Shown: positions 1 through 60,031, counted from the stretch's first letter. The stretch: 64,000 nt of DNA from IMGVR_UViG_3300043418_000072:186001-250000; one strand, 5' to 3'. Notes: generated from the letters alone by a model not told the origin. Program-made: numbers and translations.

Positions 1-885
1 TTGCAAGCCCTTGGCTCTAGCGGCTGTGACCCTATGGTTGCCGTCTAGTAGCCATCCGTTGCTGTCTGCAACTACGGGCTTCTTTAAAATATCACGTGTT
101 GTGACATTGTTGATGTGGTCCCAGTCTAAGTCGATTACTCTGCGGTAAGGATCGTCTTGATCGTAGAACTCCGGAGTCTGCAACTCACTTAGTGGAACTT
201 CTTTAAGCACCCATACCTTGTGTCGCAGAATTGGCTTTTCTAAATGATATTCATTATGTATGCCTTTAACATACTTGAGCACCTGTTGATTGGTGTAAAG
301 TTTGTTTTCTACGCTTAGGTCAACATCTTCGTCTTCTACTTCGCTAGCAGGAATCAAGCCTTCTAGTGCATAGTGCAGTTTCTTTAAGGCCCGTTCACAC
401 TCGCCATCTTTGTACAAGATACCAATTCCGCCATTTGCTTCCCATAGCTTGATATTGCTATCCCAATCGTCGATCAAGATATTAGGAGTGCCATCTGCTT
501 GTCTAGCAAACTTTTCCTTTTGGTGATCAAAGATAATGCTTTCGGGAGGGATTCTGGATAGTTTGCGATCAATCCAGTCGGCCTTTTCTCTGCTGCTTTG
601 CTCTACATCGCTCATTAGCGGAGCAGATAAGATACTGTATTCGCCTGCTAGTTTTAGCACACCGTGTAGCAGTTTACCTGCTTGTGGTAATGCTGGCAAT
701 TCAGCGAAGAATCCAGGTTCTTGTGCGACTTGATCAATGCAGTCTTTTTCTTTACGTGCTCTACGCCAATGCGTTGCACCTTCGCGTTTTGCGATCTCGC
801 CAAACATGTCCGCGAGAACACCGTCGAGGTCAACGTATACCACCGGAGTGGACTCATAACTATTTTCTAATTCAAAACTTTTCAT
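1..885 (-). CDS. HAD 5'(3')-deoxyribonucleotidase fused to a C-terminal ParB/Srx-like domain (3' end outside window)
   Basis: Not in ORF track because it is truncated. Hand translation from ATG at 885: [28 protein letters not shown]...ILSAP...NILIDDW (HAD motifs), later [20 protein letters not shown] (ParB-like DGxHR). Confidence 0.8.
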
Positions 886-906
886 ATCAGTATTTACGTG
901 GGTTTA

Positions 907-914
907 TATAAATA
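907..914 (+). promoter_or_regulatory. T4-type late promoter TATAAATA for the GIY-YIG gene
   Basis: Exact TATAAATA about 60 nt upstream of ATG 977. Confidence 0.65.
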
Positions 915-976
915 TTAGTGTAGTTCGCGGACATCCCCTTCCCAACTACTCTAATGCTACAAGGAGCAATCAGCAC

Positions 977-2757: not shown

Positions 2758-3380
2758 TAAGGACGCTTAGAGATCACCTCATCGGCAAGACCCATTTCTA
2801 CTGCTTCTTGTGCAGAAAGGAATGTGTCAAACTTCATAGTGGCAAACATTTCGTCGTATGTTTTGCCCGCAGTGTTGTGCTTGATGTACAGCTCAGTAAG
2901 GCGTTGGTTCAAGCGTTGGCTTTCTTCAAAGCTGCGTTTAGCATCTTCAAATTGCAGTTCTTGAACGTGTACGCTACCACGTGTGCTAGGAGTGCCCGAG
3001 CTAACACGGTGAATCATTGTGCGTGATTCTGGCAGTACTAGTCGTTTGCCTGGGGCTCCTGCGTTGGCAAGGAAACTGCCCATAGAGCAGGCTTGGCCAA
3101 GTACAATGGTAGAAACATCAGGCTTAATGAACTGCATAGTATCATAGATTGCCAAGCCAGCAGTGACGAGGCCACCGGGTGAGTTGATGTAAAAGAGGAT
3201 GTCTGCATTTGGATCTTCACTTTCTAAAAAGAGCATTTGTGCAATAACGAGACTAGCGGAATGCTCGCTAACATCCGTGTCCAACATGACAATACGATCT
3301 TTGAGCAAACGACTGTAGATGTCGTAAGCACGTTCGCCGTTGGCAGTTTTTTCGAGTACGGTAGGTACAAAGTTAGGCAT
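2757..3380 (-). CDS. clpP: ATP-dependent Clp protease proteolytic subunit
   Basis: ERAYDIYSRLLKDRI, YINSPGG, ACSMGS (Ser), MIHR (His), DTFLSA (Asp). Confidence 0.97.
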   Translation of the reverse strand: MPNFVPTVLEKTANGERAYDIYSRLLKDRIVMLDTDVSEHSASLVIAQMLFLESEDPNADILFYINSPGGLVTAGLAIYDTMQFIKPDVSTIVLGQACSMGSFLANAGAPGKRLVLPESRTMIHRVSSGTPSTRGSVHVQELQFEDAKRSFEESQRLNQRLTELYIKHNTAGKTYDEMFATMKFDTFLSAQEAVEMGLADEVISKRP

Positions 3381-14137: not shown

Positions 14138-15253
14138 ATGATTCCTTTTGATTTTTTCTATAATGTAATGAAAGATCACTTCTTTGATAAAACAGGGATC
14201 ATGTTAATTTATCCTCAATTTAATCAAGAGCGTATAACCTTTGTTTCTAAATTGCTAAACGATAATGCAAAGCCTGTTGTTATTTTTTATGACCAAGAAC
14301 CAATCGATGTTACTAAATTTTACGCCGAGGTATATAGACCTTATTCTCAATCTTTTAAGTCCCGTCAGGTCTTAGTAACTAGTGAGTATAGCACAGAGAG
14401 TGACAAATTGTGTAAGGATTATGAGTTGAAAGATGTCCAGTACTTCTATCACGCATTACTGTGCCATGAATGGTATCGATTGCATTGGTACGAAAACATA
14501 AATGTTAATACCGATTTTGACCGCGCATATATTACTTATAACAATTTAACATTAGACAAACGTTTGTATAGAGCAAACTTGATCATTGAGTTGCAAAAGA
14601 GAAATCTAACGTCCAATGGATACGTAAGTTACAACAATAGCAATTTTAGTGGGATAACTGCATCCACTAACACGTATGCAATGTTGCCAGTACAGCATAA
14701 ACTAAACATCCAATTGCACATGGATCTATTAGAAACCCAAATGATACTGGATACTCCTGCCCCAAGAGGAGAGTTGAGTGCCGCAGTTAATATAGGTGAT
14801 ATGCAAAAGGCATTTGTAAATCTAGTAACCGAAACAATCTTTTACGAGAACAAACAACATTTAACAGAAAAGATTTTCAAGCCCATTGTTGCAAAGATGC
14901 CATTCTTGTTGTTAGCAGGCGCCGGCTGCTTGTCGTACTTACGTAGCTACGGATTTAAAACCTTTGGAGAGTTTTGGGACGAAAGCTACGATGATATTAC
15001 AAACAGTGCTGATAGATTTAGTGCAGTGCTAGCCATACTCGAAGATCTATGCAATAAACCCCATGAAGAACTAGTGCAAATGAAGTTGGCAATGAGTGAA
15101 ATCCTAGAATACAATTTCAATCACTTTTACACAAACATGCGTCCCATTGTTGTTGACGAGTTTATAACCAAGCTAGGTGCGGCACTAACTGCAAATGGGG
15201 TAGATTATGATCCAGCTGACTTAGAGAACTTGAACTGTAGATTAACCTACTAA
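14138..15253 (+). CDS. phage glycosyltransferase-like protein (family member 2)
   Basis: LVTET...LTEKIFKPIVAKMPF...LRSYGFKTF...DESYD. Confidence 0.55.
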   Translation: MIPFDFFYNVMKDHFFDKTGIMLIYPQFNQERITFVSKLLNDNAKPVVIFYDQEPIDVTKFYAEVYRPYSQSFKSRQVLVTSEYSTESDKLCKDYELKDVQYFYHALLCHEWYRLHWYENINVNTDFDRAYITYNNLTLDKRLYRANLIIELQKRNLTSNGYVSYNNSNFSGITASTNTYAMLPVQHKLNIQLHMDLLETQMILDTPAPRGELSAAVNIGDMQKAFVNLVTETIFYENKQHLTEKIFKPIVAKMPFLLLAGAGCLSYLRSYGFKTFGEFWDESYDDITNSADRFSAVLAILEDLCNKPHEELVQMKLAMSEILEYNFNHFYTNMRPIVVDEFITKLGAALTANGVDYDPADLENLNCRLTY

Positions 15254-15256
15254 ATA
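15251..15256 (+). promoter_or_regulatory. late promoter TAAATA, leaderless start
   Basis: CTAAATA-CAGT-ATG(15261). Confidence 0.6.
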
Positions 15257-15260
15257 CAGT

Positions 15261-16418
15261 ATGAAAATTACAGACGTATTAGACGAAGCGGGTGCTGCCC
15301 CGATATATTATTTTGCCTACGGCATGTTAACAGATCCAGAATTGATGCCGGGTGCAGAATTTGTTGGACGTGCAGAGCTAAAGAATTTTGTCTTTGAGAT
15401 GTTTACCTATGCCAACGTATTCCCGTATCCTGGTGCCAGGGTAATCGGCAGCTTGTGGGCAATCGATAGACAGCTACTTGCTCAATTAGACCAAACTGAG
15501 GGATACCCAACCCTATACGATCGTAAAACGGTTCCGGTATTTGCCAATGGAGAGCGCCACGAAGCAGCGATTTACACAATGACTCCCGAGACTCGCGAGT
15601 ACATGCAAGGCACTGAACCAAACGATGCGTACATCGCTCGCATAGAGCGTGGGTATAACAATGCAGGAATTCCGTTACGTCAACTTGATGATGCACTAGA
15701 TGCCATTTACTCTGCACAGGATCTTGACGAGGGGTGGAAAGACTGGGCTGCTACAGGCGCCCTTGCTGCTGGAATGGCATTAGGTGGCGGAGCTGCTGAT
15801 GCTAAAGTTGCACCACATGCACAACCTAAAGCAACAGCCCAACACGTGGCTAAAGCTGCACACCCAGTTGCAGCTCAGTCCAAAACAGCACAACCAGAAA
15901 CCTACGGTGTTAGTATGAACACTGGTCCCGAACATACTCTACAACGTACTGCTCTTAGAGCCGGCATCAAAGGAGCAGAACTAGCACAATTCATGGCACA
16001 AACTCGCCACGAAAGTGCAGATTTTACACGTATGAAGGAGATTGGTGGAGCCAAGTACTTCCACAAGCGTTACGACCCCAAAGCCGCACCAGCTATGGCT
16101 AAGACCTTGGGCAATACACATGCAGGTGACGGAGTTAGGTATCACGGGCGCGGCTTTATTCAAATCACTGGACGAGACAACTATCGTATGGCCGGAAAAG
16201 CGTTGGGGTTGCCGTTAGAGCAAAAACCGGAGCTTGCTGCTAACCCAGAAATTGCTGCCAAGATTGCAGTGTGGTATTGGCAAACTCGCGTTAGACCTAA
16301 TGTACACAACTTCAATGACACTGCTACAGTCACTAAATATATTAACCCTGCGCTCAGAGGACTGCAAGATCGCTTGCACAACTTTAAAGAGTACACTGTA
16401 GCGATGAACATGCGATGA
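15261..16418 (+). CDS. gamma-glutamylcyclotransferase (AIG2-like) domain fused to a GH19 chitinase/lysozyme domain
   Basis: YYFAYG...LDQTEGYP..Y (GGCT); FMAQTRHES...YHGRGFIQITGRDNY...AVWYW...TKYIN (GH19). Confidence 0.88.
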   Translation: MKITDVLDEAGAAPIYYFAYGMLTDPELMPGAEFVGRAELKNFVFEMFTYANVFPYPGARVIGSLWAIDRQLLAQLDQTEGYPTLYDRKTVPVFANGERHEAAIYTMTPETREYMQGTEPNDAYIARIERGYNNAGIPLRQLDDALDAIYSAQDLDEGWKDWAATGALAAGMALGGGAADAKVAPHAQPKATAQHVAKAAHPVAAQSKTAQPETYGVSMNTGPEHTLQRTALRAGIKGAELAQFMAQTRHESADFTRMKEIGGAKYFHKRYDPKAAPAMAKTLGNTHAGDGVRYHGRGFIQITGRDNYRMAGKALGLPLEQKPELAANPEIAAKIAVWYWQTRVRPNVHNFNDTATVTKYINPALRGLQDRLHNFKEYTVAMNMR

Positions 16419-17437
16419 AAATAAACGAAATTTTAACAGAAGCCCTAGTAGGCGAACTCAACTTCGGTCCACTAAAGATTATGGTGGACCAACATACCAT
16501 TGACAGATCTATTCAACGCTATGTTTCACCGTTTGGTGTAGACCGTGTGCTAAAACAACTGCCTATTGTAATCGACGAATTGCGCGGGGTTGAACCCGGG
16601 CAACAAGTTTGGGTTTACGATCAGGCACAAAACATTGCGTTAGGTATGCGTAGACTGGGCACAGAGCAAAACCTGCGCTTCTTATTTAAAACTGTAGTTG
16701 GTGATCGCCCATACGACAGCGACATGCCTGTTATCTTATTGGGCGAGCCCCACGAAGAGCTAGACGAGCAAGTATTAGACGAATTAATCACTAGCGATCA
16801 CCGTGCTAAAATCCAGCAAACAATGAAGTCAGCGGGCTACACTGAGCTAGGTGCTGGCGCAGACGCTGCGGTATACGCAAAAGATGCTCATACAGTAATT
16901 AAAATCCTTATGCCAGACAGTGGGCAGTTAAGCACAGGCGAAAAGACATTCCTAGACTTCTATCAATATGTAACAACTAGCAAGCCAAATCCATTCTTGC
17001 CAAGATTTGTTAAGATTCAGGGGCAACATCATAATCGTTTTGAAATTGACGGCGAACCATTTAGGCAAATCGCTATGGAACGCTTGCAACCTATTCCGGC
17101 TGGTACCGCATTGCAGGGCATTGTTTGGATCATGAGTGAGTGTGCAGCCCGCCAACTTAGATGGGAGCAAGTGCTTGATGACTTTATGACCGAAAGTGAT
17201 CTATGGCGTTACTGGGGCGGTGACCCTGATGTCCCGGAACTAGTGCATAACGAGTTCATGGATCACCGTAAGCAAAGCTACTACGAAGCATTGTACATCA
17301 CTATGCTTATTCTAGCTAGACTGGGCGCACACAAAGGTTGGGGATGGGACTTGCATACAGAGAATGTTATGCAACGTGCAGATGGTACACCAGTTATCAT
17401 CGATCCGTGGTACCACGATGTACTAGGAACCGTTTAA
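16415..17437 (+). CDS. two-domain protein: N-terminal DUF4258/RelE-like domain plus protein-kinase-like domain
   Basis: Kinase: LGAGADAAVY, VIKI, AMERL, WDLHTENVM, IIDP. N-domain: HTIDRSIQRYVS. Confidence 0.75.
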   Translation: MKINEILTEALVGELNFGPLKIMVDQHTIDRSIQRYVSPFGVDRVLKQLPIVIDELRGVEPGQQVWVYDQAQNIALGMRRLGTEQNLRFLFKTVVGDRPYDSDMPVILLGEPHEELDEQVLDELITSDHRAKIQQTMKSAGYTELGAGADAAVYAKDAHTVIKILMPDSGQLSTGEKTFLDFYQYVTTSKPNPFLPRFVKIQGQHHNRFEIDGEPFRQIAMERLQPIPAGTALQGIVWIMSECAARQLRWEQVLDDFMTESDLWRYWGGDPDVPELVHNEFMDHRKQSYYEALYITMLILARLGAHKGWGWDLHTENVMQRADGTPVIIDPWYHDVLGTV

Positions 17438-18189
17438 TCCACTTGCTTGTAGATAAACTCGGCCTCGGGTATACGGGTTCTACCGTTTTTACTACCCAAT
17501 ACAACAACGCGGCGCAGGCCGCGTTCTGTTTCAACTGTTAAAATAATACATCCACCTGCTGCATTAGTGGTGCCAGTCTTGCTAACAATGAACTTGTGCT
17601 TGTGACCAATTAAGGGATTGGTTTGTTTAAAGATCAACCACCGCTTTTTGTTCTTAATCTCTACTCGAGTCTTGGCAGCAGAGTCCACAATAAGATAGTT
17701 CTTCTCTGCTACATTCAATAACAATAACAAATCTTCTGCGGTACTGGTGTTGTCTGGTAATAGTCCTGTCGCATCAACATAGTTAGTATGTCGCATACCA
17801 TACTTCATAGCGTTGGCATTCATGTCGCTGATGCAATTACCGTACCCGCCTATATAATTCCTGCATAGCAAATCTGCGGCATGGTTGTCGCTTTTGACCA
17901 TTGCAAGATTAATAAGCTCTTGCCTAGTTAGACGTAGAGTTTGGTTGTAGGCTATGGATTGATTTAGATCCTGTTTTGCTTCCATAACTGTTAGCACAGT
18001 CATTACCTTGGTAATGCTAGCCATTGGACGTATGGTGCCAGTGTCTTTACTGGCTAGGATTTGGTTTTGTTCGTCTGCGACAAGCCAGGACTTTGCAGTA
18101 AGGTCGCTAGTGTCGTCGATAGTTGTGGCAGGTTTCGCCCAGCTAATGCTGCTGGCAAGTAATGCCAAAATAAGTATAGTGCTACGCAT
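17434..18189 (-). CDS. D-alanyl-D-alanine carboxy/endopeptidase (peptidase S11, PBP7-like)
   Basis: Signal peptide; SITK (SxxK), SDN (SxN), KTG. Confidence 0.93.
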   Translation of the reverse strand: MRSTILILALLASSISWAKPATTIDDTSDLTAKSWLVADEQNQILASKDTGTIRPMASITKVMTVLTVMEAKQDLNQSIAYNQTLRLTRQELINLAMVKSDNHAADLLCRNYIGGYGNCISDMNANAMKYGMRHTNYVDATGLLPDNTSTAEDLLLLLNVAEKNYLIVDSAAKTRVEIKNKKRWLIFKQTNPLIGHKHKFIVSKTGTTNAAGGCIILTVETERGLRRVVVLGSKNGRTRIPEAEFIYKQVD

Positions 18190-18232
18190 TTGTCAAAGTA
18201 GTTTAGCATAGATGCTAGTGATATCAAAGTGT

Positions 18233-18772
18233 TTAGGTTATTCGGGGATTTCCGAATACAGTTTCAATTGCCATTCCGCTGTGCAGCTTGCGTTGGTAGG
18301 TTCCGTGGTCAACCATCTTTAAATGCGGATCATTGAATAAGAACTTCAGCAAGTGCTCGCTGTCTACCATTGGTACTGGTAAACGCTTTAGGGTTGTCCG
18401 CATAGCATCACTACTTTCAATCCAGAAACCTGGCTTGTTAAGCAACTGAGTCACTTTGTTTATCACACGGTCTTTGCTTTGTTTTTGTCCATCGTGTCCA
18501 ATACCTTGGATCTTATATCCAACCCATTGCTCGTTTGCTCTAGGACCACGATAAAATACACACGCATCAACTTCGGGGTCGGCGTCCCAGTCAATGACAT
18601 TCCAATCGCTTGGGATAACGTCTCTGATGCTGGTAACAAAACTGCCGTGTGCAGTAGAACTGTATGCGTTGTTAACTAGATCAATTAAATTGTCACCGAG
18701 CTCTTGCTTATCGGCATTGGATACAACTAATTCCCATAGATTTTTAGGCAGGCTAACTTCTGTAATACGCAT
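18233..18772 (-). CDS. hypothetical, probable internal head protein
   Basis: MRITE leader; ATAAATA 5 nt before ATG. Confidence 0.65.
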   Translation of the reverse strand: MRITEVSLPKNLWELVVSNADKQELGDNLIDLVNNAYSSTAHGSFVTSIRDVIPSDWNVIDWDADPEVDACVFYRGPRANEQWVGYKIQGIGHDGQKQSKDRVINKVTQLLNKPGFWIESSDAMRTTLKRLPVPMVDSEHLLKFLFNDPHLKMVDHGTYQRKLHSGMAIETVFGNPRIT

Positions 18773-18779
18773 CTAGTAT

Positions 18780-19094
18780 TTATAGCATCGTTCCGGTCTT
18801 GGGAAAACGGTAACGCACATCCTTGCCTATGCTAATAACACAAGCTGCTTCTCTGTCAAACTCAATAATAGTATATGAGCCAGTTTCCTTATTAAGGTAC
18901 AGAGCCATTGCAACGTCGCTCATATTTGAAGTTGTGCCCATTACCATTGGCTCTTCTCCGTACTTGTCTTTAAGATCCTTCATTAGGACTTTAACAGGAA
19001 AACACACAATCTTCTTGTTTGTTTCTACTGGTTTTTGTGCATAGGATGCAGCACATGTTAGGGCAAGACAGAGAGCAATAAGGTATTTAGACAT
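18780..19094 (-). CDS. secreted hypothetical protein
   Basis: Start reassigned to MSKYLIALCLAL (signal peptide); C...YGEEP...N.ETGSYT...AC. Confidence 0.7.
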   Translation of the reverse strand: MSKYLIALCLALTCAASYAQKPVETNKKIVCFPVKVLMKDLKDKYGEEPMVMGTTSNMSDVAMALYLNKETGSYTIIEFDREAACVISIGKDVRYRFPKTGTML

Positions 19095-25351: not shown

Positions 25352-25648
25352 TTATACAGACAAAAAGTCAGTGATCAAATTATTTTGGGCATCTACAACT
25401 TCAATACGTTTCCTGCTGCTGCTATGGTATTGTGGTTTGTAGGTTAGTAAGAAAAAGCTGATACTTGCTGGATCCTCGAGAGTGAGATACAAGTATCTGC
25501 CGTCGTTTTTAAGCGTGTACGGCTGCTGATAACGACTGCCCCATCGCTGCATATCCGTTTGAATAAAGGATATTGCAGTTTGGTTAACGCCAACAGGATT
25601 TCCTGGAAAAATGGTTTCGTCAGCAGGTAATCGAAACCTAACTTGCAT
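25352..25648 (-). CDS. hypothetical protein
   Basis: TGATG-coupled to the rpsU stop; start MQVRFRLP. Confidence 0.6.
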   Translation of the reverse strand: MQVRFRLPADETIFPGNPVGVNQTAISFIQTDMQRWGSRYQQPYTLKNDGRYLYLTLEDPASISFFLLTYKPQYHSSSRKRIEVVDAQNNLITDFLSV

Positions 25649-25881
25649 CAGTACAGTTTCTTTGGCAAGCTCTCTGCTTGCAGTTTCTTTTGCCAACGGC
25701 GCTTGGCTTGTGCTGCTGCCTTCTTGCGCTTGGTAGTTGGCTTTTCGTAAAACTCACGTTCGCGAAGTTCTTGCAACTTGCCACTCTCCATGATTTTCTT
25801 TTTAAATTTGCGCAAGGCTTTTTCAACGTTGTCGTTTTGCACAACTACGCTGCTGCCATAAAGTTTCATTCTTTCGTTCAT
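25648..25881 (-). CDS. rpsU: ribosomal protein bS21
   Basis: VEKALRKFKKK...LQELREREFYEKPTTKRKK. Confidence 0.93.
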   Translation of the reverse strand: MNERMKLYGSSVVVQNDNVEKALRKFKKKIMESGKLQELREREFYEKPTTKRKKAAAQAKRRWQKKLQAESLPKKLY

Positions 25882-50813: not shown

Positions 50814-51236
50814 TTAGCCACGGTTTCCTAGTGCCCTGTTAGCCATACTGCTAACAGTTTTCTCAGGAGCAGTTTGTGCTCCGTCTTCTGCACCAGGAGT
50901 CGATTCATCACCGAAACCGTCATCACTAAATGTAGCCAAGTAAACGTACTTAACGCCGTTTTCGTCGTCTTTAATATCTGTGATTAAGTTTTTGATTGTG
51001 TCGTTGCTCTTACGTGCAGACTCTAGTGCATCTGCGTTAAACGATTCACCACCTGGTAAACGCTTAACTAGATTAACTAAGCTGTCAACACGTACCTTAG
51101 GGACTGAATGCCCGTGAGCACGATTACGTAATTCTTCAAGAGCTGTGGCTAAGACGCTATCTCCACGAGTTTCTGCCTCGTCTTCGATCATTGCGCCTAT
51201 GCCGCTGTCTTCAACAATAATTTCTGCGAATCGCAT
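50814..51236 (-). CDS. putative head-associated protein
   Basis: MRFAEIIVE leader; C-terminal V.SMA.RA. Confidence 0.65.
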   Translation of the reverse strand: MRFAEIIVEDSGIGAMIEDEAETRGDSVLATALEELRNRAHGHSVPKVRVDSLVNLVKRLPGGESFNADALESARKSNDTIKNLITDIKDDENGVKYVYLATFSDDGFGDESTPGAEDGAQTAPEKTVSSMANRALGNRG

Positions 51237-51919
51237 TAGCGTACTTCTCTGCCTAAGTCGGCTGTACCGCCAGTTGCTGCATCGCTGGCACCGAAGTCTG
51301 CGCCTTGGTCCATGTCACTCATTTCACCGTCAAGACCGCCGTCCATGCTTGGACCTAAGTCTGCGCCGCCCATGCCCATATCTTGGCCCATGTCTTCGCC
51401 GGCTAAGCCACGTGCTGCTGAATCAGCAGTTTCGCGACCTTGTTGTAGTGTTTGTGCCAAATTGCCTAGCAATGGGCTAACTGCGCTCTTAAAGCCGTCA
51501 GCTTTTTCAATGCCAATTTGGTCACGGATTGTGTCTAACAATGCAGGCAACTGCTCGTTCTGCATTTTGCTGATTTTTTCCAACATGTCTTGGATGCTAT
51601 CAACCATGTCTTTTGCAGCTAAGATAGCTTCAGACTTGGCCATTTCGCTTTCGTTGATCAACTGTTGTTTGTTGTCACGCATCCAGCTGTGTAGGCTCTC
51701 ACGTACCATAAGCATTTCCATGTAAGATGGATTCTTTTCAGCGGTGTGAACGCCGTGTGTGCTCTTAATCTTGTTTAGGCTTTCGCTGATAGCAGTTGCC
51801 ATCGTGTAAGCCTTCTTGAAGGTTAAGTTTGCATAGTCAACTTGGAAACCAAAGCGGCTTTCCATGACTTTGTTCATTTGTTTTGCGGTTGGCTTAGCGC
51901 CCATTTCGTTTAATCTCAT
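51236..51919 (-). CDS. putative prohead core/scaffold-like protein
   Basis: MRLNE and QLINE sites; helical core; acidic Gly/Met-rich tail. Confidence 0.6.
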   Translation of the reverse strand: MRLNEMGAKPTAKQMNKVMESRFGFQVDYANLTFKKAYTMATAISESLNKIKSTHGVHTAEKNPSYMEMLMVRESLHSWMRDNKQQLINESEMAKSEAILAAKDMVDSIQDMLEKISKMQNEQLPALLDTIRDQIGIEKADGFKSAVSPLLGNLAQTLQQGRETADSAARGLAGEDMGQDMGMGGADLGPSMDGGLDGEMSDMDQGADFGASDAATGGTADLGREVR

Positions 51920-54477: not shown

Positions 54478-55596
54478 TTACTTGTTAAAATGCGCTGCGC
54501 CGAACTGCCCACGATTTACAATTTTAACCAGGCCATTTGGGCTCGGAAATACAAATCCTTCGCCACCGGGTTGGCCACCACTAAACTGTTCTAGTCCCTT
54601 AACTTGAGATTCAAGCTGTTGACTTAGGTTAACTTTAAACGCATAGATTGCGTTCCATATTGCTTTAAGGCCTATGTAACCTGGACTTTCGTCTAGGCCG
54701 CCTTCTGCATTTTGTGCATACAACGCACCAGGAGTTTCCTGATCGCCTACTAGGATTTGAAACTGCTTTCCGCTAGCTTTTGCTTTCAAGAACTCAACAA
54801 GATCCCTGCCTTCGGGCTGGTTAGTAATGCGCTTGTTAAAGAATTGCTGTAGCAGAGCTTTTGCTGTTCCAGACTGTGTAGCAAGGAACTGGTCCACAAT
54901 CGGGCCCCACTTTTTGATTGCTGCATCTGCTGCTTTAGAAAGCTGCACAGGTTCTTTGAGGCTAAACTTAATGCCTAAAGTAGGGTTAATAATAGCCACA
55001 CCGCCTGGAATATTACGCAAACCGTTGCCGTTCCATGGCGTTTTTGTACCACCAGGGGAATCAGACTGTACGTGTACAACAATGCCTGCAATAGTTCTGT
55101 TAATTAAATGTCCTAGTTCACTTTCAATGGGAACACGGTACTCAACAGTTGGGCCCTTAAACACAAAGCGTCCATGGATAGGAGTTAGTGGCTCGCTGTA
55201 CATTAGGTCACCGAAGAACCATCCTGGCCCAACAACTGCTTTATCTAATGCAGGCCACATTTGTGCTAGCTTTGCATATAAGTCATCACGAGTTGTTCCC
55301 GACTTCTTTTGTAAATCGTATTCACGCCATTGCTCGGGGCTAGTTGCTAGAACACCTTTGTCTGGCATGTACTTGTCAGTTACTACTAACTGTCCTTGTT
55401 CATTGCGACCGAACCACAATGCAATACCACCATCCCATTTAATACTCATATTACCAGCTTGGGCAATAGCACCCCTAAGTCCTGCAAGAGCTCGTGCAGC
55501 ATCTGCACTGCCATTGGGTCCAAAGATAGCATCCTCTGGATGGGGAATACGTGGATCTGCTGCTTCAGTCAGCATGTTAATAAAGCTGAATTTCAT
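54478..55596 (-). CDS. ATP-dependent ligase-fold nucleotidyltransferase (DUF6267-like)
   Basis: SIKWDG (motif I KxDG), FGDLMY (III), EGFV (IV), LVKIVNR (V); MLTE leader. Confidence 0.7.
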   Translation of the reverse strand: MKFSFINMLTEAADPRIPHPEDAIFGPNGSADAARALAGLRGAIAQAGNMSIKWDGGIALWFGRNEQGQLVVTDKYMPDKGVLATSPEQWREYDLQKKSGTTRDDLYAKLAQMWPALDKAVVGPGWFFGDLMYSEPLTPIHGRFVFKGPTVEYRVPIESELGHLINRTIAGIVVHVQSDSPGGTKTPWNGNGLRNIPGGVAIINPTLGIKFSLKEPVQLSKAADAAIKKWGPIVDQFLATQSGTAKALLQQFFNKRITNQPEGRDLVEFLKAKASGKQFQILVGDQETPGALYAQNAEGGLDESPGYIGLKAIWNAIYAFKVNLSQQLESQVKGLEQFSGGQPGGEGFVFPSPNGLVKIVNRGQFGAAHFNK

Positions 55597-56612
55597 TATG
55601 CGAATAGTCCTCTAACCATGTCAAGACCCTGCTGGATCTTTTGTCTGTCTTGTTCTGCTCTAGCAATAGCATCAGGTGTTTGTGCCTTGTCGCGTTTCTT
55701 GCCTGCGATATCAATCATGGCTTTTTCTTCGTAACGTTGCCAAAACTGCTGTATAAAATCCTGTGCGCTTGAGAAGTTAGCAAAATCGCCTTGTCCCATC
55801 ATGCCACTGGCTTCTGCGCTGCGGGCAAATCCCTTAACGCCGTTAACTAGTTTAGCAATTTTAACATCATTTAAGTCGTTGCCTGGAAATTGCTTTAGCA
55901 ATGAATCGATACGTGGTTGCACGCCTTGTTGTTGGGCTTCGTAGTTAAACAAATCTAGGATATAGGTGCTAGGGTTAGTTGTGATAGTAACAACTTGTGT
56001 GCCCTTTTGTTTACTAAACGGAACGTGTTGATTGTCAATAACCTTTAGCTGCACACCCGCATGTTGAATACTAATATCCAACAGCTCGCCTAGCACACTA
56101 AACATGTTGCCAGTTAGCAAGCCCTTGACCCCACGCTCAGGAGTAACACGGGCTGCGCCCCATTGCTCTAAACGCTCGGGATGCCACATAAAGTCAATCT
56201 GTACGTAATCGTTTGCGCCAATTTGGAAAATAGGGTGACCGGGTTTGCTTTCGCTTGTGTCCACATAAGGAGCATGACCTTCTTTAACAAACTGATCTGC
56301 TAGCTTGTTCCAGTTTCCTGTAAACTGTGCAAATGTTGCACCTTCAAACTCAGGTCCGATCATTTGTAAGTCAATGTCTCCGTAGACCTTGTCTGGTTGT
56401 TCTGCTGTGTCTGCTTCGTGATGTGCGCTGCTACCTGTAGGGCGGCCTCTGCGTACAGGGCCCAATCCCTTAGGCTCTAGCCATTTGTTAAAGTCCATAA
56501 CAAACTTGTCAACTACTGCTAGCGCAGGAGCAACAATTTTAGGATGTAGGACTGTGTTTTGTGTTAAGGTAGTGTCCCACCCACCTTCTCTTAGAATTTC
56601 AAAAATTTTCAT
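55596..56612 (-). CDS. Pol-beta superfamily (PolX-like) nucleotidyltransferase
   Basis: TGS...YGDIDL...VQIDFM three-Asp signature; MKIFEILRE leader. Confidence 0.7.
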   Translation of the reverse strand: MKIFEILREGGWDTTLTQNTVLHPKIVAPALAVVDKFVMDFNKWLEPKGLGPVRRGRPTGSSAHHEADTAEQPDKVYGDIDLQMIGPEFEGATFAQFTGNWNKLADQFVKEGHAPYVDTSESKPGHPIFQIGANDYVQIDFMWHPERLEQWGAARVTPERGVKGLLTGNMFSVLGELLDISIQHAGVQLKVIDNQHVPFSKQKGTQVVTITTNPSTYILDLFNYEAQQQGVQPRIDSLLKQFPGNDLNDVKIAKLVNGVKGFARSAEASGMMGQGDFANFSSAQDFIQQFWQRYEEKAMIDIAGKKRDKAQTPDAIARAEQDRQKIQQGLDMVRGLFA

Positions 56613-57367
56613 AGTAAACTGCTATACTTTCTAAACCACGTTGCTGTACCAGGTGCAACGTCTTCGGGTAATGTTAGTAATCCCTTGGATTGGTCCTGTC
56701 TGGCTTGTGCTAGTTTACCTTCGCGATCTGGGTCGTTTGTTAGTGCGGCCATAATAGTGCCTACACTGTTTAAATCTGCTGCCTTTGCTTTGGGATTAAG
56801 CAAAACTTTTGCGGCAGCATCTCTATTGTTTGCTACCACTTCGTTATTGTCTCTGCGCAATACGTTGCCAGCAAAGGCATCTACTTTAAGCCCAAGATGC
56901 TTACCAATGCTGTTTAACAAAATAAAGATTTGCGCTGCTTTAAACTTGGGATCTTCGTAACTGCCGCGTGGGCCATGCTGGTGCCAATCTGCTACACGGG
57001 TAGCATCTGGTATAACCATTAAGTCAACTTGAGCTGCACGATTGCCTGCTTCAGTTTTGTAAGGAACTTCAATATGCACGTTGCGACCTGAGATTTTGGC
57101 CTTGTAGCCTTTAGCCATCATAAACTCTGCTAGAGCTACTTTAGCTGCCTTCTCATCTGCTGCACCAAACTTCTTCATTACAGTCTCTGCATCTAAAAAC
57201 AAGTCCATGTCACCTGCTGATACTTTGAAGCCTGCTGAGCCAATGTCAGCAATGGCCTTTAGCCCAGCAGGTAGGTCTGCTTGTACATGGGCAATGATGC
57301 CCTGTACTGCCTCTTTGGGAATGTCGCCATCCCCGAAAATGTTTCCACCTTCGTACAAATGCATCAT
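56609..57367 (-). CDS. Pol-beta superfamily (PolX-like) nucleotidyltransferase
   Basis: IGSAG..SAGDMDL...QVDLM; thumb-like GS...IGKHLGLKV...G; HLYE leader. Confidence 0.72.
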   Translation of the reverse strand: MMHLYEGGNIFGDGDIPKEAVQGIIAHVQADLPAGLKAIADIGSAGFKVSAGDMDLFLDAETVMKKFGAADEKAAKVALAEFMMAKGYKAKISGRNVHIEVPYKTEAGNRAAQVDLMVIPDATRVADWHQHGPRGSYEDPKFKAAQIFILLNSIGKHLGLKVDAFAGNVLRRDNNEVVANNRDAAAKVLLNPKAKAADLNSVGTIMAALTNDPDREGKLAQARQDQSKGLLTLPEDVAPGTATWFRKYSSLL

Positions 57368-59790
57368 TTGATTCTCTTCATTTTACGCCATAGTGTTTCG
57401 GCTATGTCAATTTTGCTTTCAGCCATTGCTGGTTGTGCTGCTGCTGCGGCTTGTACTTTCTTGTTGTAAGCGTCCACTTCGGCAGGGGTTGCACCACCCG
57501 AAACAACCTTAGGTTGCTTTGGTTGCGCTGGTGTTGCTGGCTTAGCTGCTGTAGGAGTTGTGTTTACAGTAGTTGTAGTCTTACCGTAGCCGCCCATTTG
57601 CTGACCAAAGTTTGGTGCTGCTTTAGGAGCTGCTGGTTTAATTCCGGCCATCTTAGCTGCTGACGCATAATCAAATCCAGTTGATCCAGTTACCGGGGTT
57701 GGCTTTGCTGCTGGAGCAGTTGTGGTAGGAGCGGGTGTAGCTTGCGCTGTTGCTGCCGGAGCAGGTGTAGCTTGCGCTGTTGCTGCCGGAGCAGGTGTGG
57801 CTGCTGGCTGTTGTGCTGCTGCATATTGCGAACGTAAATTGTTCATCGCTGCGCCTGCTGTTTTAGATGCATCTGCAGGTGGTGCTTTTGCTCCGCCGGT
57901 GCTTGCTGCATTGTACGAGTCAACTGCTTGACCTGCTTGCTGTGCGCCAGCGCCTTTTAGCAAACTAGATAAGAATCCGCCCTTTGTGGCGTTTGCGGCC
58001 TGTGACGATTTGTCAAGCGGGATATTCATGTCGGCGAATACGCTGTTAATTAAGTTATCCTTGACACCTTGGTCTTTAAGAAACTTAACTAGGTCTTCGC
58101 TGTTTACAGTCGGGGCTGCTGCTAACTTTGCGCCACGACGCCAATTCATGTCTAGCTTATCGTAAGTGATATTGTTAGTTGCTGCGTCTGCGCCAGCTGC
58201 GGCAATACGTTTTAGCGGTGCTGTTGCTTTACCAATTGCTGCGCCAGCTTGTTGGTTAAACGACTTTAGCTTATCTAATGCACCTTCGTTTAAACTTGCT
58301 TTAGCGATTGCACGGAAAATAGCTTTACGACCAGATTCTGTAATCTGTACGCCACCACGTGCTTTGCCCATACCTTCGCGTAAGACCCACATACGGATAG
58401 TCATGTCACGATCAATGTAGCTTTCACGTAAACGGATACCGTTTGCTGCGGCTCTGTTTAAACGATCAATGTAGGCATTACTAGTTGGTACATAGTTTCC
58501 TTGGGCACCTTGTTGAGTTGCGTAATCTGCGTCTACTTTATCCTGCACCGTTTTGTTTAATTCAACTTGGTTGCGGGCTTGCTGTGCAAAATCTGTAGAC
58601 GGTTCTGCAACTGGTGTTGCGGCTTGCTGTGCTGCGCTTATGTTTGATGTTCGACCACTTAATTCGTCGGCTTGTGCTTGCGGCATTGTGCTAGACGCAG
58701 TTGGTCCACCTGCGCCAACCCCATTGGCATAAACATTACTGCCAGTCTCTGCAGGGATATTGATATTTTGTCCTACTGCAATCTTGTGTACATCAGTGAT
58801 CTCTGGGTTAGCAGCTTGTAATTCTTCTACTGATACACCATTGGCTTTGGCAATCTGACTCAGTGACTCACCTTTTGTTACAGTGTGTTGAATTACTTCG
58901 CCTGCATCAACTCCGCCCATGTCTACACTACCAGCGCCAGTTGGCTGTAAGCTATTGCTAACCGAAATATCTTGTAACTGCGCTGCTGGCATTCCAGTAG
59001 CTTGCTCAATTGCTGTTTTACCCGCTTCATCTGCATCAAGCCACTGCTGTGCTGCATCTACATCTGCTTGTGCGTTCATTGCTGCATCGGCGTCAGGTAA
59101 TTGTAAATCTTGGCTTGCTTCTGGCTCAGCTGCTGCATCCGGCTCTGTAGTTGCTGCATCTGGTGCATCGGCTAATAAGTCTTTTGCCACGTGCATAGCT
59201 GCTACAGTTCCGCCTGTTGCTAATGCGCTACCAACTGCGCTAGAGAATTTGTTACCTTGCAACATTTTGTTAGCAAATGTTAATCCTGCTGCGATACCAA
59301 CTGGGCCAAGGCCCGAACCTGCTAAACCCGCAAGACCAACTACGATTGCTTTAATAGCAAGAGCCATGCCCGGTACTTTACTTAATTCACGGTACCAATC
59401 AAGCGCCTGTTGCACCTTGCCTGCGTCGCCGCCTGCTGCTGACATAATTTCTTTTTGCGCTTGGTCGATCATTGCATCTAAGCCAGCAACTGGTCCAGAA
59501 TTACCAATCCAGTTACCAACGTCTTTAAATGCAGAAGATACTTTACCAGCAACGTCAACGCCTTTACCTAATAGGGTACGGTTGCTTGCTTGATCGTCTG
59601 TAGAGAATTCTGTGTTTGCACCTGCTGCTGCGCCGTCGGCTACACGCTGAAATGCTTGTTTGACTTGATCTTGTGTTAGGTCTGCTTCTTTAAGCAAGCG
59701 ACCGAGATTGTACAATTTCTTGTAATTTGGATCTTCAATTAATCGTTGCTTTGCTCTTACATTTTCCGATAGGATGCTGTTAATTCTCAT
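57364..59790 (-). CDS. large LysM-domain virion (ejection-like) protein
   Basis: HTVTKGESLSQIAKANGVSVEELQAANPEI...IAVGQNINIP (LysM); hydrophobic Gly-rich hairpin; Ala/Pro-rich linkers; MRINSILSE leader. Confidence 0.8.
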   Translation of the reverse strand: MRINSILSENVRAKQRLIEDPNYKKLYNLGRLLKEADLTQDQVKQAFQRVADGAAAGANTEFSTDDQASNRTLLGKGVDVAGKVSSAFKDVGNWIGNSGPVAGLDAMIDQAQKEIMSAAGGDAGKVQQALDWYRELSKVPGMALAIKAIVVGLAGLAGSGLGPVGIAAGLTFANKMLQGNKFSSAVGSALATGGTVAAMHVAKDLLADAPDAATTEPDAAAEPEASQDLQLPDADAAMNAQADVDAAQQWLDADEAGKTAIEQATGMPAAQLQDISVSNSLQPTGAGSVDMGGVDAGEVIQHTVTKGESLSQIAKANGVSVEELQAANPEITDVHKIAVGQNINIPAETGSNVYANGVGAGGPTASSTMPQAQADELSGRTSNISAAQQAATPVAEPSTDFAQQARNQVELNKTVQDKVDADYATQQGAQGNYVPTSNAYIDRLNRAAANGIRLRESYIDRDMTIRMWVLREGMGKARGGVQITESGRKAIFRAIAKASLNEGALDKLKSFNQQAGAAIGKATAPLKRIAAAGADAATNNITYDKLDMNWRRGAKLAAAPTVNSEDLVKFLKDQGVKDNLINSVFADMNIPLDKSSQAANATKGGFLSSLLKGAGAQQAGQAVDSYNAASTGGAKAPPADASKTAGAAMNNLRSQYAAAQQPAATPAPAATAQATPAPAATAQATPAPTTTAPAAKPTPVTGSTGFDYASAAKMAGIKPAAPKAAPNFGQQMGGYGKTTTTVNTTPTAAKPATPAQPKQPKVVSGGATPAEVDAYNKKVQAAAAAQPAMAESKIDIAETLWRKMKRIK
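57728..57798. repeat. 30-bp in-frame tandem repeat (about 2.4 copies, ATPAPAATAQ)
   Basis: GGAGC(A/G)GGTGTAGCTTGCGCTGTTGCTGCC repeated. Confidence 0.85.
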
Positions 59791-60031
59791 TGTTTCTTAG
59801 TCTCCGTACACCACGTGTGAATTTTTGTGGATCCTGCGAACGGATACTGTTTAGAAGCCTACGCTCAAGTTCAGCAGATGTCTCAGCATCATAATTTTCC
59901 TTGATATAGTTTACTAAATTGATAGCACTAGCGATCACATTATTAGCACGGCTTTCAATAAGGCTTTCTTTGTCCTTTTGTGCACCGATACTAGCAAGTT
60001 CGTCTAGGATACTACGAGTACGTTTTTGCAA
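59780..60031 (-). CDS. conserved late hypothetical protein
   Basis: Probable TTG start (MQKRTRSILDEL) after GGAG; LERRLLNSIRSQDPQKF. Confidence 0.7.
   Translation of the reverse strand: MQKRTRSILDELASIGAQKDKESLIESRANNVIASAINLVNYIKENYDAETSAELERRLLNSIRSQDPQKFTRGVRRLRNNEN

What the first reader, a model, noticed from the sequence alone, without database searches (positions are those of the whole stretch)
15261..18772. Window-wide capsid-targeting leader and internal [L/I]-x-E sites suggest cleavable enzyme polyproteins as head cargo
Seen: unrelated proteins share an N-terminus: MKITDVLDE (15261), MKINEILTE (16415), MRITE (18772), [11 protein letters not shown] (885), MRFAEIIVE (51236), MRLNE (51919), MKIFEILRE (56612), MRINSILSE (59790), and FYRTFLAE (42776). 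Several follow a TAAATA box. In multidomain members, an acidic [L/I]-x-E site falls at the domain boundary (AQDLDE|GWK, EELDE|QVLDE|LIT, DVDLSVE|NKL). The recognisable replication and metabolic enzymes (helicase, primase, RNR, Clp) do not start this way. Inference: this is a modular cargo system in which domains are fused behind a packaging tag and released by the prohead protease.
Basis: partly seen in the sequence, partly recalled or inferred. Interest (0 to 1): 0.75.

Follow-up and report, generated by a model that had tools for sequence, protein, structure and literature searches.

The report
Capsid-targeting leader on phage enzymes
A nine-residue N-terminal tag (MKINEIITE-like), ending in the cutting motif of the T4-type head protease, sits on dozens of unrelated enzymes in a clade of uncultured ~350-kb freshwater phages. 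It most likely addresses them to the capsid for injection, extending a known phage T4 trick to cleavable multi-enzyme proteins.

Summary
In the 354-kb phage contig that holds the window, 8 of 501 genes start with M[KR][ILVFM]xx[ILVMF][ILVMF]xE, against 0 of 2,291 internal Met positions. A back-translated scan of IMG/VR found at least 119 loci, against 1 for the reversed pattern. They encode at least 35 unrelated protein families.

Conservation stops at Glu9, and residue 10 is A/S/G/N/D in 87%. Synonymous codons are used freely, so selection acts on the peptide.

The phage has a T4-type head module. The contig breaks inside it, which explains the missing protease. An 87%-identical relative and 7 other related contigs encode a gp21-like S77 protease. 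Their scaffold has the highest [LIV]xE density in the proteome.

The leader resembles the cleaved T4 gp24 propeptide (MAKINELLRE) and the T4 capsid-targeting sequence (MKTYQEFIAE). Both strict-leader proteins of PA5oct, a related cultured phage, are virion proteins by mass spectrometry.

The polyprotein idea also holds up by comparison. Modules that follow the leader in one protein are internal in others, and are then preceded by [LIV]xE (62/67 and 38/39 junctions).

No proteomics exists for this phage, so packaging and cleavage are inferred. Verdict: a new variant of a known kind.

The parts
15251..15256 (+). TAAATA box 4 nt before the ATG of the GGACT-GH19 gene; candidate T4-like late promoter
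   Evidence: ATAAATA and TAAATAC are about 19-23-fold enriched within 40 nt upstream of starts. RNA depth in run X3 rises from 0 to about 30-39 between 15241 and 15287, while DNA depth stays flat.
15261..15287 (+). Leader MKITDVLDE (9 codons), ending L-D-E before Ala10
   Evidence: Homologues start MKFTDLLKE and MKLHDILLE.
15261..16418 (+). Cargo gene, 385 aa: leader, GGACT/AIG2-like domain (res 17-148), disordered linker, hydrophobic signal-like segment, GH19 muramidase domain (res ~182-376)
   Evidence: Pfam and PHROG hits. AF2 shows two folded domains with pLDDT<50 at res 145-210.
15723..15731 (+). Internal candidate cleavage site L155-D156-E157, just before G158-W-K
   Evidence: [LIV]-x-E directly precedes the GWK+hydrophobic module in 62/67 homologous junctions with many different upstream partners.
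15732..15806 (+). GWKDWAATGALAAGMALGGGAADAK: signal-peptide-like or membrane segment that would become N-terminal after cleavage
   Evidence: Homologues have Tat-type SRRGFLG variants carrying Pfam TAT_signal. The function is inferred.
16415..16441 (+). Leader MKINEILTE; its start overlaps the previous gene's stop (ATGA)
16415..17437 (+). Cargo gene, 340 aa: leader, ~105-aa N-domain (res 10-116), kinase-like module (T7 gp0.7 / Kinase-PolyVal-like, weak hits)
16760..16783 (+). Junction L116-D-E-Q-V-L-D-E123 between the N-domain and the kinase-like module
   Evidence: Relative G005 has leader + AQVLDE + kinase module and no N-domain. A co-occurring strain deletes 16760-17422 in frame, leaving leader + N-domain only, in both DNA and RNA. 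38/39 internal kinase-module copies have [ILVFM]xE within a 22-residue stretch ending 13 residues before the anchor, most often at one fixed distance.
17434..18189 (-). Neighbour: Peptidase_S11 D-Ala-D-Ala carboxypeptidase with an ordinary signal peptide and no leader
18233..18772 (-). Conserved 179-aa protein with shortened leader MRITE; TAAATA box at 18777-18782
   Evidence: 243 homologues. Their N-termini are MRLxE|FxLPKN or full leaders such as MRATEFIVE|FQLPKN; longer forms end GGGSLEE|FELPKN.
50814..51236 (-). 140-aa leader protein MRFAEIIVE; positional equivalent of PA5oct virion protein EST35_0238 (MKIKDILVE)
51236..51919 (-). 227-aa homologue of PA5oct virion protein EST35_0237; heads the transcription unit (TAAATA at 51947-51952); not a canonical leader
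54478..55596 (-). 372-aa DUF6267 protein with a KxDG motif and variant leader MKFSFINMLTE; a related protein elsewhere starts MKINEILTE
   Evidence: (L066).
55596..56612 (-). 338-aa leader protein MKIFEILRE|GGWD with a GDIDL motif (nucleotidyltransferase-like by eye). In L063 the same module is internal, after VKE|GGWD
56609..57367 (-). 252-aa protein with short N-terminus MMHLYE|GG, in the same overlapping gene chain
   Evidence: no family hit. Leader status uncertain.
57364..59790 (-). 808-aa leader protein MRINSILSE with a second LIE site at res 17-19, hydrophobic Gly/Ala segments and a LysM domain
59780..60031 (-). Conserved 83-aa gene (TAAATA at 60051-60056) heading the chain. In related contigs, at least 6 unrelated leader families occupy the slot behind its homologues
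1..885 (-). 3' part of a 305-aa protein with an NT5C domain and a ParB-like C-terminal part (by eye), starting [11 protein letters not shown] (gene starts at 885, TAAATA at 891-896); weak leader match; contains DVDLSVE|NKL after the NT5C domain

Best explanation
The 8-9-residue N-terminus (consensus M-K/R-I-N-E-I-I/L-T-E) is a capsid-targeting propeptide of the phage T4 type.

Proposed mechanism:
1. Late in infection the tagged proteins bind the scaffolding core of the prohead through the short amphipathic leader.
2. A gp21-like S77 prohead protease then cuts after the Glu of [L/I/V]-x-E, which removes the leader.
3. In multi-module proteins the protease also cuts at linker sites of the same form. 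This releases separate enzymes inside the head: gamma-glutamyl cyclotransferase-like, GH19 muramidase, T7 gp0.7-like kinase, nucleotidyltransferase-like, DUF6267/KxDG, HD hydrolase, NMNAT-like and LysM proteins.
4. The enzymes are ejected with the DNA to act at the start of the next infection.

Shown here: the motif, its enrichment, selection at the peptide level, its spread over unrelated families, the T4-type head module and protease in the clade, the [LIV]xE pattern at module junctions, and markedly higher RNA depth over the two genes in the finding's interval than over their neighbours.

Inferred: binding to the core, cleavage, packaging and ejection.
For: 1. Enrichment. The strict pattern hits 8/501 N-termini against 0/2,291 internal Met positions. 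It is the largest de novo N-terminal cluster in this genome and in relative G005. IMG/VR gave at least 119 loci against 1 for the reversed control.

2. Peptide-level selection. There are 79 distinct 27-mers among 99 non-identical leader genes, and synonymous codon use equals that of the gene bodies.

3. Cleavage-site signature. Conservation ends at E9. Residue 10 is A/S/G/N/D in 118/135 proteins, against a background of about 0.36.

4. Modularity. The 135 leader proteins fall into at least 35 unrelated BLASTP families. Conserved flanking genes are followed by variable leader-cargo slots.

5. Protease.
- Peptidase_S77 is present in 8/17 long leader-bearing contigs, all with sizes implying ~350-kb genomes.
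- G005 (87% nt identity) has the order 252-aa protein, protease, scaffold, MCP.
- This contig has the portal and the small 80-aa protein at one end and only the MCP C-terminus at the other.
- The G005 protease matches T4 gp21 structure 5JBL at E=1.5e-15.

6. Specificity. The scaffold has the highest [LIV]xE density in the G005 proteome (5.7 per 100 aa against 1.46 +/- 0.92), and the protease ranks second. Scaffold density is likewise far above the proteome mean in PA5oct (7.07) and Vibrio phage 2.275.O (6.85). MCP N-termini carry LxE|S and LxE|G. T4 gp21 cuts after L/I-X-E (PMC9026906).

7. T4 likeness, read from the T4 genome: gp24 MAKINELLRE; ipII and ipIII MKTYQEFIAE; alt MELITELFDE, compared with this phage's small head protein MFITELFDG.

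8. Proteomics in a related cultured phage. Both strict-leader proteins of PA5oct (EST35_0150 MKINDIITE, EST35_0238 MKIKDILVE) are annotated as virion proteins by ESI-MS/MS. The base rate is 93/461. There is synteny with window 50814-51919.

9. Polyprotein junctions.
- 62/67 GH19 signal-module junctions and 38/39 internal kinase-module junctions carry [LIV]xE in the expected position, with diverse upstream partners.
- One homologue keeps a whole internal leader, KMRASDFIAE|YEG.
- Three natural architectures of the 16415 gene share the junction.
- The LDE|G site lies in a disordered linker.

10. Expression. TAAATA boxes are strongly enriched upstream of starts, including structural genes. RNA depth jumps at 15241-15287 and stays high across both leader genes.
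Against: - No protease gene is on this contig. Its presence is inferred from relatives and from the position of the contig break.
- There are no virion proteomics or N-terminal data for this phage or its close relatives. The PA5oct support rests on two proteins (chance about 0.04), and the PA5oct paper does not discuss cleavage.
- My first junction test, on the IMG/VR set alone, was not significant (7/24 against 0.17, p=0.11).
- A few junctions have Thr at P3 (TDE, TNE).
- [LIV][DE]E before GWK could simply be a conserved part of that module. Homologous sequences are not independent observations.
- The nearest isolate by capsid protein, Vibrio phage 2.275.O, has almost no leader genes. The expansion is therefore specific to this clade.
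- Cargo carrying Sec/Tat-like signals could be ordinary exported enzymes.
- A protease-leader complex prediction gave no answer.
Confidence: 0.72

Rival explanations
1. The leader is a head- or virion-targeting tag (or another protein-protein address) that is not cleaved. On this view the [LIV]-x-E at module junctions is just a conserved flexible linker or helix cap inherited with each module, and the multi-domain proteins act intact, like classical polyvalent proteins.
For: - No cleavage data exist.
- Junction motifs travel with their modules, for example VDE|GWK even directly behind the leader.
- The first junction test was not significant.
- Polyvalent proteins are often delivered unprocessed (PMC5512222).
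Against: - Conservation stops exactly at Glu9, followed by a small residue.
- P2 varies freely while P3 and P1 are fixed, across unrelated upstream contexts.
- The scaffold is saturated with the same motif.
- An internal signal peptide behind a cytoplasmic-type domain makes little sense without cleavage.
Confidence: 0.14
2. The conserved start is a nucleic-acid-level element. It could be a translation-initiation enhancer for the nearly leaderless late mRNAs, or a 27-nt recombination cassette that shuffles genes.
For: - Three leader genes have TAAATA only 4 nt before the ATG.
- The codons are A/T-rich.
- Shared 5' ends would favour recombination, and cargo slots are hypervariable.
Against: - Synonymous codon use in the leader equals that of the gene bodies, with 79 distinct 27-mers among 99 genes.
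- Most leader genes are translationally coupled or have a normal spacing with a Shine-Dalgarno sequence.
- Other genes with a 4-6 nt spacing lack the leader.
- The same motif logic recurs at internal junctions.
Confidence: 0.03
3. The tag is recognised by another system. Candidates are the phage's own ClpXP (a degron that times enzyme activity), a host export route, or a different protease such as the weak DUF6782 metallopeptidase-like region of the 487-aa neighbour protein.
For: - ClpX and ClpP are encoded in the window.
- There is a weak DUF6782 hit (E=0.003, below the cut-off) in the genome 110106-111569 protein.
- Some cargo carries Sec/Tat-like signals.
Against: - The leader is acidic and lacks the features of Sec or Tat signals.
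- It matches T4 propeptides cut by gp21.
- The motif saturates the scaffold and the MCP N-terminus.
- PA5oct leader proteins are virion components.
Confidence: 0.07
4. Chance, or a general preference for MK/MR-I-x-E starts.
For: MK and MR starts are common in many genomes.
Against: - 0/2,291 internal-Met controls match.
- N-terminal similar pairs number 49, against 5 for residues 16-24.
- The IMG/VR scan gave at least 119 loci against 1.
Confidence: 0.01

Closest known systems
Phage T4 capsid targeting sequence (CTS) of internal proteins IPI/IPII/IPIII (Mullaney & Black 1996; reviewed in PMC9026906, PMC3012670)
   Same: - A short N-terminal propeptide (MKTYQEFIAE in ipII and ipIII) shared by otherwise unrelated, hypervariable proteins.
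- It ends in I-x-E and is removed by the gp21 protease.
- It addresses cargo to the prohead core.
- Cargo genes sit in variable slots.
   Different: - 9 rather than 10 residues, with a different sequence.
- The phage is a ~350-kb uncultured freshwater member of the PA5oct / Vibrio phage 2.275.O group, which is only distantly related to T4.
- The cargo is mostly enzymes of 120-800 aa in at least 35 families, not three small basic proteins.
- Many are multi-module with internal sites.
- Nothing has been shown experimentally.
T4 gp24 vertex-protein propeptide and T4 Alt
   Same: - gp24 starts MAKINELLRE, the closest known sequence to MKINEILTE. From my own knowledge, gp24 loses its first 10 residues during maturation.
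- Alt (MELITELFDE) is an enzyme packaged in the head and cut by gp21. This phage's small head protein starts MFITELFDG.
   Different: gp24 is a shell protein, not cargo. Alt is a single enzyme, cut at both ends rather than split into separate enzymes.
Polyvalent proteins of phages and conjugative elements (Iyer et al. 2017, PMC5512222)
   Same: - The same kind of domain pool: a kinase related to Kinase-PolyVal, peptidoglycan hydrolases, GNAT, ParB-like, nucleotidyltransferases, DUF6321.
- Combinatorial fusion.
- Proposed delivery with the DNA.
   Different: - In that work, processing is ascribed to in-built metallopeptidase domains or is absent.
- Here the domains are mostly separate genes or short fusions, each behind a CTS-like leader or a [LIV]xE linker that fits the prohead protease.
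Ejection and inner-body proteins of phiKZ, 201phi2-1 and SPN3US, processed by their prohead protease (PMC5694885, PMC7411985, PMC10052503)
   Same: Giant phages that pack many proteins in the head. These proteins are cut after Glu at a three-residue motif by a diverged gp21 homologue.
   Different: - The motif is S/A-x-E, not L/I/V-x-E.
- No shared short N-terminal address has been described.
- It is a different phage lineage (chimalliviruses).

Membership tests
T4-type CTS / prohead-protease propeptide system | The phage has a T4-type prohead module (portal, small core proteins, gp21-like S77 protease, scaffold, gp23-like MCP) | tested here: met
   - The Gp23 family hits this contig, and a portal-like gene (recognised by position and synteny with PA5oct) and a small head protein lie at its start.
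- S77 is found in 8/17 related contigs, including the 87%-identical G005, in a T4-like gene order.
- The G005 protease matches PDB 5JBL at E=1.5e-15.
- On this contig the protease itself is missing, because the contig ends inside the module.
T4-type CTS / prohead-protease propeptide system | A short N-terminal propeptide ending in [L/I]-x-E followed by a small residue | tested here: met
   The leaders end I/L/V-x-E. Residue 10 is A/S/G/N/D in 118/135. The motif definition is from PMC9026906.
T4-type CTS / prohead-protease propeptide system | The same propeptide on otherwise unrelated proteins | tested here: met
   At least 35 BLASTP-unrelated families among 135 leader proteins. Pfam content differs between them.
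T4-type CTS / prohead-protease propeptide system | Sequence relationship to T4 propeptides | tested here: inconclusive
   MKINEILTE against gp24 MAKINELLRE, and against ipII/ipIII MKTYQEFIAE. The likeness is striking, but the sequences are too short for statistics.
T4-type CTS / prohead-protease propeptide system | Tagged proteins are physically present in the head | not testable with these tools
   The only support is indirect: both PA5oct strict-leader proteins are annotated as ESI-MS/MS virion proteins.
T4-type CTS / prohead-protease propeptide system | The propeptide is removed by the prohead protease | not testable with these tools
   The complex prediction gave no answer. Site saturation of the scaffold supports the specificity only.
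T4-type CTS / prohead-protease propeptide system | Late expression together with the head genes | tested here: inconclusive
   - A TAAATA (T4 TATAAATA-like) box heads leader-gene units and many structural genes.
- RNA depth rises at the box.
- No time course is available.
Polyvalent proteins (Iyer et al. 2017) | Two to 15 effector domains from a shared pool in one polypeptide | tested here: met
   Homologues combine GH19 with GGACT, HAD, GNAT, deaminase, PF18760, DUF6934 and LysM. The kinase module sits behind many different partners. In this genome most cargo has only one or two domains.
Polyvalent proteins (Iyer et al. 2017) | An in-built peptidase (MPTase, etc.) for self-processing | tested here: not met
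   No peptidase domain was found in the window's cargo genes. There is only a sub-threshold DUF6782 hit in one protein outside the window.

The most novel reading that the evidence does not exclude
The prohead protease does more than trim a tag. It works as a polyprotein-maturation enzyme that unmasks new N-terminal signals inside the capsid.

In the 15261 gene and in dozens of homologues, cutting at [LIV]-[DE]-E|GWK, or before SRRGFLG, would expose a Sec- or Tat-type signal peptide on the GH19 muramidase. An enzyme injected into the cytoplasm could then be re-exported by the host into the periplasm, or inserted into the membrane, while its former fusion partner (GGCT, HAD, GNAT, deaminase and others) stays in the cytoplasm. 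One injected precursor would thus feed two compartments.
Probability: 0.25. Interest if true: 0.8.

Novelty: new variant of a known kind. Interest (0 to 1): 0.62.

Why it matters
It would show that the T4 capsid-targeting principle is an old and widespread address code, not a peculiarity of T-even phages. A large clade of uncultured freshwater jumbo phages would use it to load their heads with a combinatorial set of host-takeover enzymes.

The simple pattern (a 9-residue leader, plus [LIV]-x-E between modules) gives three things:
- A sequence-only way to predict which genes of such phages encode injected proteins.
- An explanation of how polyvalent-type effector domains can be delivered as separate enzymes.
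- A short tag that could be tested for loading foreign proteins into jumbo-phage capsids, as the T4 CTS is used today.

Tried and rejected
- DNA and protein searches of GenBank phages with the finding's region and two cargo proteins found nothing. Relatives appeared only through the capsid protein and protease.
- PF03420 was not found on this contig. This is explained by the contig break and is not evidence of absence.
- Full-text search for the leader strings found no relevant paper. Searches on CTS, jumbo phages and PA5oct found no description of this leader.
- The first statistical test of [ILVMF]xE at 24 BLAST-defined junctions was not significant (p=0.11). It was also biased by alignment to the leader's Glu. 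I replaced it with anchor-based tests on two large homologue sets.
- VAEG/QGVAEG linkers are enriched here (7 observed against 2.06 expected, with the maximum of 200 shuffles equal to 7). They are concentrated in three adjacent genes, so I treat this as suggestive only.
- The protease + leader peptide complex prediction returned no answer.
- The Atlas search for the 179-aa protein gave no usable lead.
- Looking up NCBI-sourced homologues gave no organism names.
- The 252-aa protein at 56609-57367 is not a detectable paralogue of the neighbouring 338-aa protein.
- The RNA/DNA-level explanation was rejected on codon evidence.
- FYRTFLAE (42776) was rejected as a leader: it is not N-terminal, the gene lies in the RNR operon, and there is no family support.

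Full report
**What the window is.** The window is bases 186001-250000 of a single 354,098-bp virus contig with 43.5% G+C. GenBank phages hold nothing close at the DNA level, nor for two of the cargo proteins. The capsid protein and head protease of its close relative place it near Vibrio phage 2.275.O (69%), Pseudomonas phage PA5oct (65%), Erwinia pEa_SNUABM_19/47, Phosso, Atu_ph07 and SCTP-2. This is the jumbo-phage group with T4-like head genes. Sequencing runs that hold the region are freshwater metagenomes and metatranscriptomes.

**The observation.** I called 501 genes on the contig. The pattern M[KR][ILVFM]xx[ILVMF][ILVMF]xE matches 8 true N-termini:
- MRINEIITE
- MKINEIITE
- MKITDVLDE
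- MKINEILTE
- MRFAEIIVE
- MKIFEILRE
- MRINSILSE
- MKINEVITE

It matches 0 of 2,291 internal Met positions. Blind clustering of residues 2-10 returns this group as the largest N-terminal cluster, both here and in the relative G005. It adds an NMNAT-like protein starting MFIAEMFTE. There are 49 similar pairs at the N-terminus, against 5 for residues 16-24. Looser variants are MKTTDFITE, MFLNQIFE, MSDMRKLLE, MKFSFINMLTE and MRITE.

The proteins are unrelated beyond the leader:
- GGACT + GH19
- T7 gp0.7-like or Kinase-PolyVal-like kinase modules
- a GDIDL nucleotidyltransferase-like protein
- DUF6267 with a KxDG motif
- a LysM protein of 808 aa
- DUF6321
- an HD_4 hydrolase
- a cytidylyltransferase-like protein

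ClpP, ClpX, NrdA, NrdB, the DnaB-like helicase and the primase lack the leader. MRITE is a shortened one. [16 protein letters not shown] and FYRTFLAE are weak or wrong.

**It is a widespread peptide signal.** I back-translated the leader and scanned IMG/VR. The same pattern read backwards returned 1. Of these, 117/119 matches lie at ORF starts. Together with this genome and G005, the 135 leader proteins form at least 35 BLASTP-unrelated families.

Among 99 non-identical leader genes there are 79 different 27-nt coding sequences. Synonymous codon use at every leader position equals that of the gene bodies; for example GAA is 84-86% in the leader and 82% in the bodies. Selection is therefore on the peptide, not on DNA or RNA.

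Conservation stops at Glu9. Residue 10 is A/S/G/N/D in 118/135 proteins, against a background of about 0.36, and later positions are unconstrained. This is the shape of a cleavage site.

**The protease.** PF03420 (T4 gp21) is not on this contig. The reason is structural:
- The contig starts with a portal-like gene (411-2117, minus strand) and an 80-aa head protein (138-380).
- It ends with only the last 74 residues of a gp23-like capsid protein.
- G005 (320,767 bp, 87% nt identity) runs 252-aa protein, protease, scaffold, capsid protein. It is then collinear with the end of this contig.
- PA5oct and the Vibrio phage have the same order.

About 3.5 kb, including the protease, is therefore simply unassembled here. 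S77 was found in 8 of 17 long leader-bearing contigs, whose CheckV completeness values all imply ~350-kb genomes. The G005 protease matches the T4 gp21 structure 5JBL.

T4 gp21 cuts after L/I-X-E (PMC9026906). In G005 the scaffold has the highest [LIV]xE density of the whole proteome (5.7 per 100 aa, against 1.46 +/- 0.92), and the protease ranks second. Scaffold density is likewise far above the proteome mean in PA5oct and the Vibrio phage. The capsid-protein N-termini carry LxE|S and LxE|G. This matches the T4 picture of a scaffold that is chopped into peptides.

**Likeness to T4.** I read these from the T4 genome rather than from memory:
- ipII and ipIII both start MKTYQEFIAE, the classical capsid targeting sequence.
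- gp24 starts MAKINELLRE.
- alt starts MELITELFDE.

The clade's leader (MKINEILTE) is closest to the gp24 propeptide. The small head protein behind the portal starts MFITELFDG, like Alt. The review states that CTS residues 4 and 7 target and residues 8 and 10 direct processing. The hydrophobic and Glu positions of the new leader line up with these.

**Proteomic hint.** PA5oct has two strict-leader genes:
- EST35_0150 (73 aa, MKINDIITE), directly behind the portal.
- EST35_0238 (104 aa, MKIKDILVE).

Both are annotated as virion proteins by ESI-MS/MS. The base rate is 93 of 461. Window gene 51236-51919 is homologous to the virion protein EST35_0237. In both phages it is followed by the small leader protein.

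**Polyproteins.** Modules that directly follow the leader in one protein are internal in others, and the junctions keep leader remnants such as NESIEE|, IEE|S and VKE|GGWD. A first test on 24 such junctions was not significant (p=0.11). I therefore used two large homologue sets.

1. *The GH19 module* (1,016 homologues, 120 read). It starts with GWK plus a hydrophobic Ala/Gly stretch, or with a Tat-type SRRGFLG. In 62 of 67 GWK junctions it is directly preceded by [LIV]-x-E. This holds whether the upstream partner is the leader itself, GGACT, a HAD phosphatase, GNAT, a deaminase, PF18760, DUF6934 or others (also 53).

2. *The kinase-like module.*
 - 38 of 39 internal copies have [ILVFM]xE within a 22-residue stretch ending 13 residues before the GYxxLG anchor.
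 - The spacing is most often 18 residues (70 of the 110 copies that have a site).
 - There are 37 different upstream contexts, and the background rate is 0.37.
 - The leader's Glu falls in the same stretch in 72/79 short forms.
 - One homologue keeps a complete internal leader including the Met.

For the window's own genes:
- LDE155-157|GWK of the 15261 protein lies in a 65-residue low-confidence linker between two folded domains.
- The 16415 gene exists in three natural forms that share the junction. This phage has leader-Ndomain-kinase. G005 has leader-kinase. A ~92%-identical co-occurring strain has leader-Ndomain, with an in-frame 663-nt deletion starting exactly at codon 116, seen in both DNA and RNA contigs.
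- The N-domain recurs structurally in viral fusions with GH19, cytidylyltransferase, DUF6267 and NTP_transf_2.

**Expression.** TAAATA-containing 7-mers are the most enriched words (apart from one Shine-Dalgarno-like word) within 40 nt upstream of starts; 29 of the 53 genomic ATAAATA copies lie there. They occur before 68 genes, including the terminase gene (by position) and several very large genes that are probably structural, by size only. There are two spacing classes, 4-6 nt and 17-27 nt. All but one of the strict-leader genes carry the box or lie in overlapping gene chains headed by one.

In metatranscriptome run X3, depth is 0-3 upstream of 15240. It is 30-53 across 15241-17151, which covers both leader genes, and 4-11 over most of the adjacent downstream stretch. 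DNA depth is flat throughout. This fits a promoter at 15251-15256.

**Rivals:**
- A nucleic-acid element is excluded by the codon data.
- Chance is excluded by the controls.
- A tag without cleavage, or another protease or ClpXP, cannot be excluded without proteomics. They fit the data less well (details in the Rival explanations section).

**Comparison and novelty.** The mechanism is that of the T4 CTS and gp21, and the domain pool is that of polyvalent proteins (PMC5512222). The new points are:
- the clade;
- the particular leader;
- the scale and enzymatic nature of the cargo;
- the evidence that [LIV]xE linkers make prohead-protease-cleavable polyproteins;
- the signal peptides that such cleavage would expose.

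I found no description of this in the searchable literature.

Noticed in passing
Whole contig; in the window e.g. 15251-15256(+), 18777-18782(-), 891-896(-): 17 genes have the TAAATA box only 4-6 nt before the ATG, with no room for a Shine-Dalgarno sequence. If the box is a T4-like late promoter, these mRNAs would be leaderless or nearly so. A second class has 17-27 nt spacing with a Shine-Dalgarno sequence.
   Followed up: partly
Contig ends (genome 1-380 and 353872-354098): The contig breaks inside the head-gene module. Only the last 74 residues of the capsid protein are present. About 3.5 kb (core protein, protease, scaffold, capsid 5' part) is missing, although CheckV rates the contig as 100% complete. 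G005 breaks at nearly the same place.
   Followed up: partly
window 16760-17422: A co-occurring strain (~92% identity) has an in-frame 663-nt deletion that removes the kinase-like module. It is seen in both DNA and RNA contigs of the source-type samples.
   Followed up: partly
Genome 106584-113577 (outside the window): Four overlapping genes all start with leader variants: MFIAEMFTE (NMNAT-like), MKTTDFITE, MSDMRKLLE (HD_4) and MFLNQIFE. Two of them carry QGVAEG linkers, four copies in all. In G005 an 846-aa protein runs PQQQGVAEG|QLNEY, joining the N-terminus of one of these genes to the sequence that follows QGVAEG in its neighbour, which suggests a fusion at this motif.
   Followed up: partly
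Genome 120625-122360 (outside the window): Probable lysis cassette: a stand-alone GH19 (208 aa, TAAATA box), a membrane protein and a lipoprotein. The leader-DUF6321 gene is inserted between them. A third GH19 copy lies at genome 20338-20742.
   Followed up: no
Whole contig (e.g. window 25648-25881): A family of 7 small proteins (59-93 aa) shares the N-terminus MNERI[KR][EQ]LA. This is a second recurrent N-terminal motif, unrelated to the leader.
   Followed up: no
window 2757-3380(-) and 25889-27091(-): The phage encodes its own ClpP and ClpX (Pfam E=2e-61; zf-C4_ClpX plus AAA_2).
   Followed up: no
Genome 151496-153707 (outside the window): Small ORFs in an array of tiny genes give weak Gp23-family hits (a 132-aa ORF with a capsid-protein-like N-terminal motif). 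Meaning unknown.
   Followed up: no
window 977-1570(+) and 47124-47804(-): ORFs with [10 protein letters not shown]- or WYIGKD-type N-termini look like GIY-YIG homing endonucleases by eye.
   Followed up: no
Related loci L006-L118; genome 325462-326358 and window 59780-60031: Two conserved genes, one ending ...WVxG* and one ...FSRGVRK..., are each followed in different contigs by different leader-cargo genes (at least 3 and at least 6 unrelated families). These are hypervariable cargo slots, like the T4 IP1 locus.
   Followed up: partly
window 16442-16762 (residues 10-116 of the 16415 protein): A ~105-aa domain of unknown function recurs by predicted structure (TM 0.73-0.89) at the start of viral proteins that carry GH19, PAP2, cytidylyltransferase, DUF6267 or NTP_transf_2 domains. 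It also occurs alone. It could be a second, larger adaptor module.
   Followed up: partly
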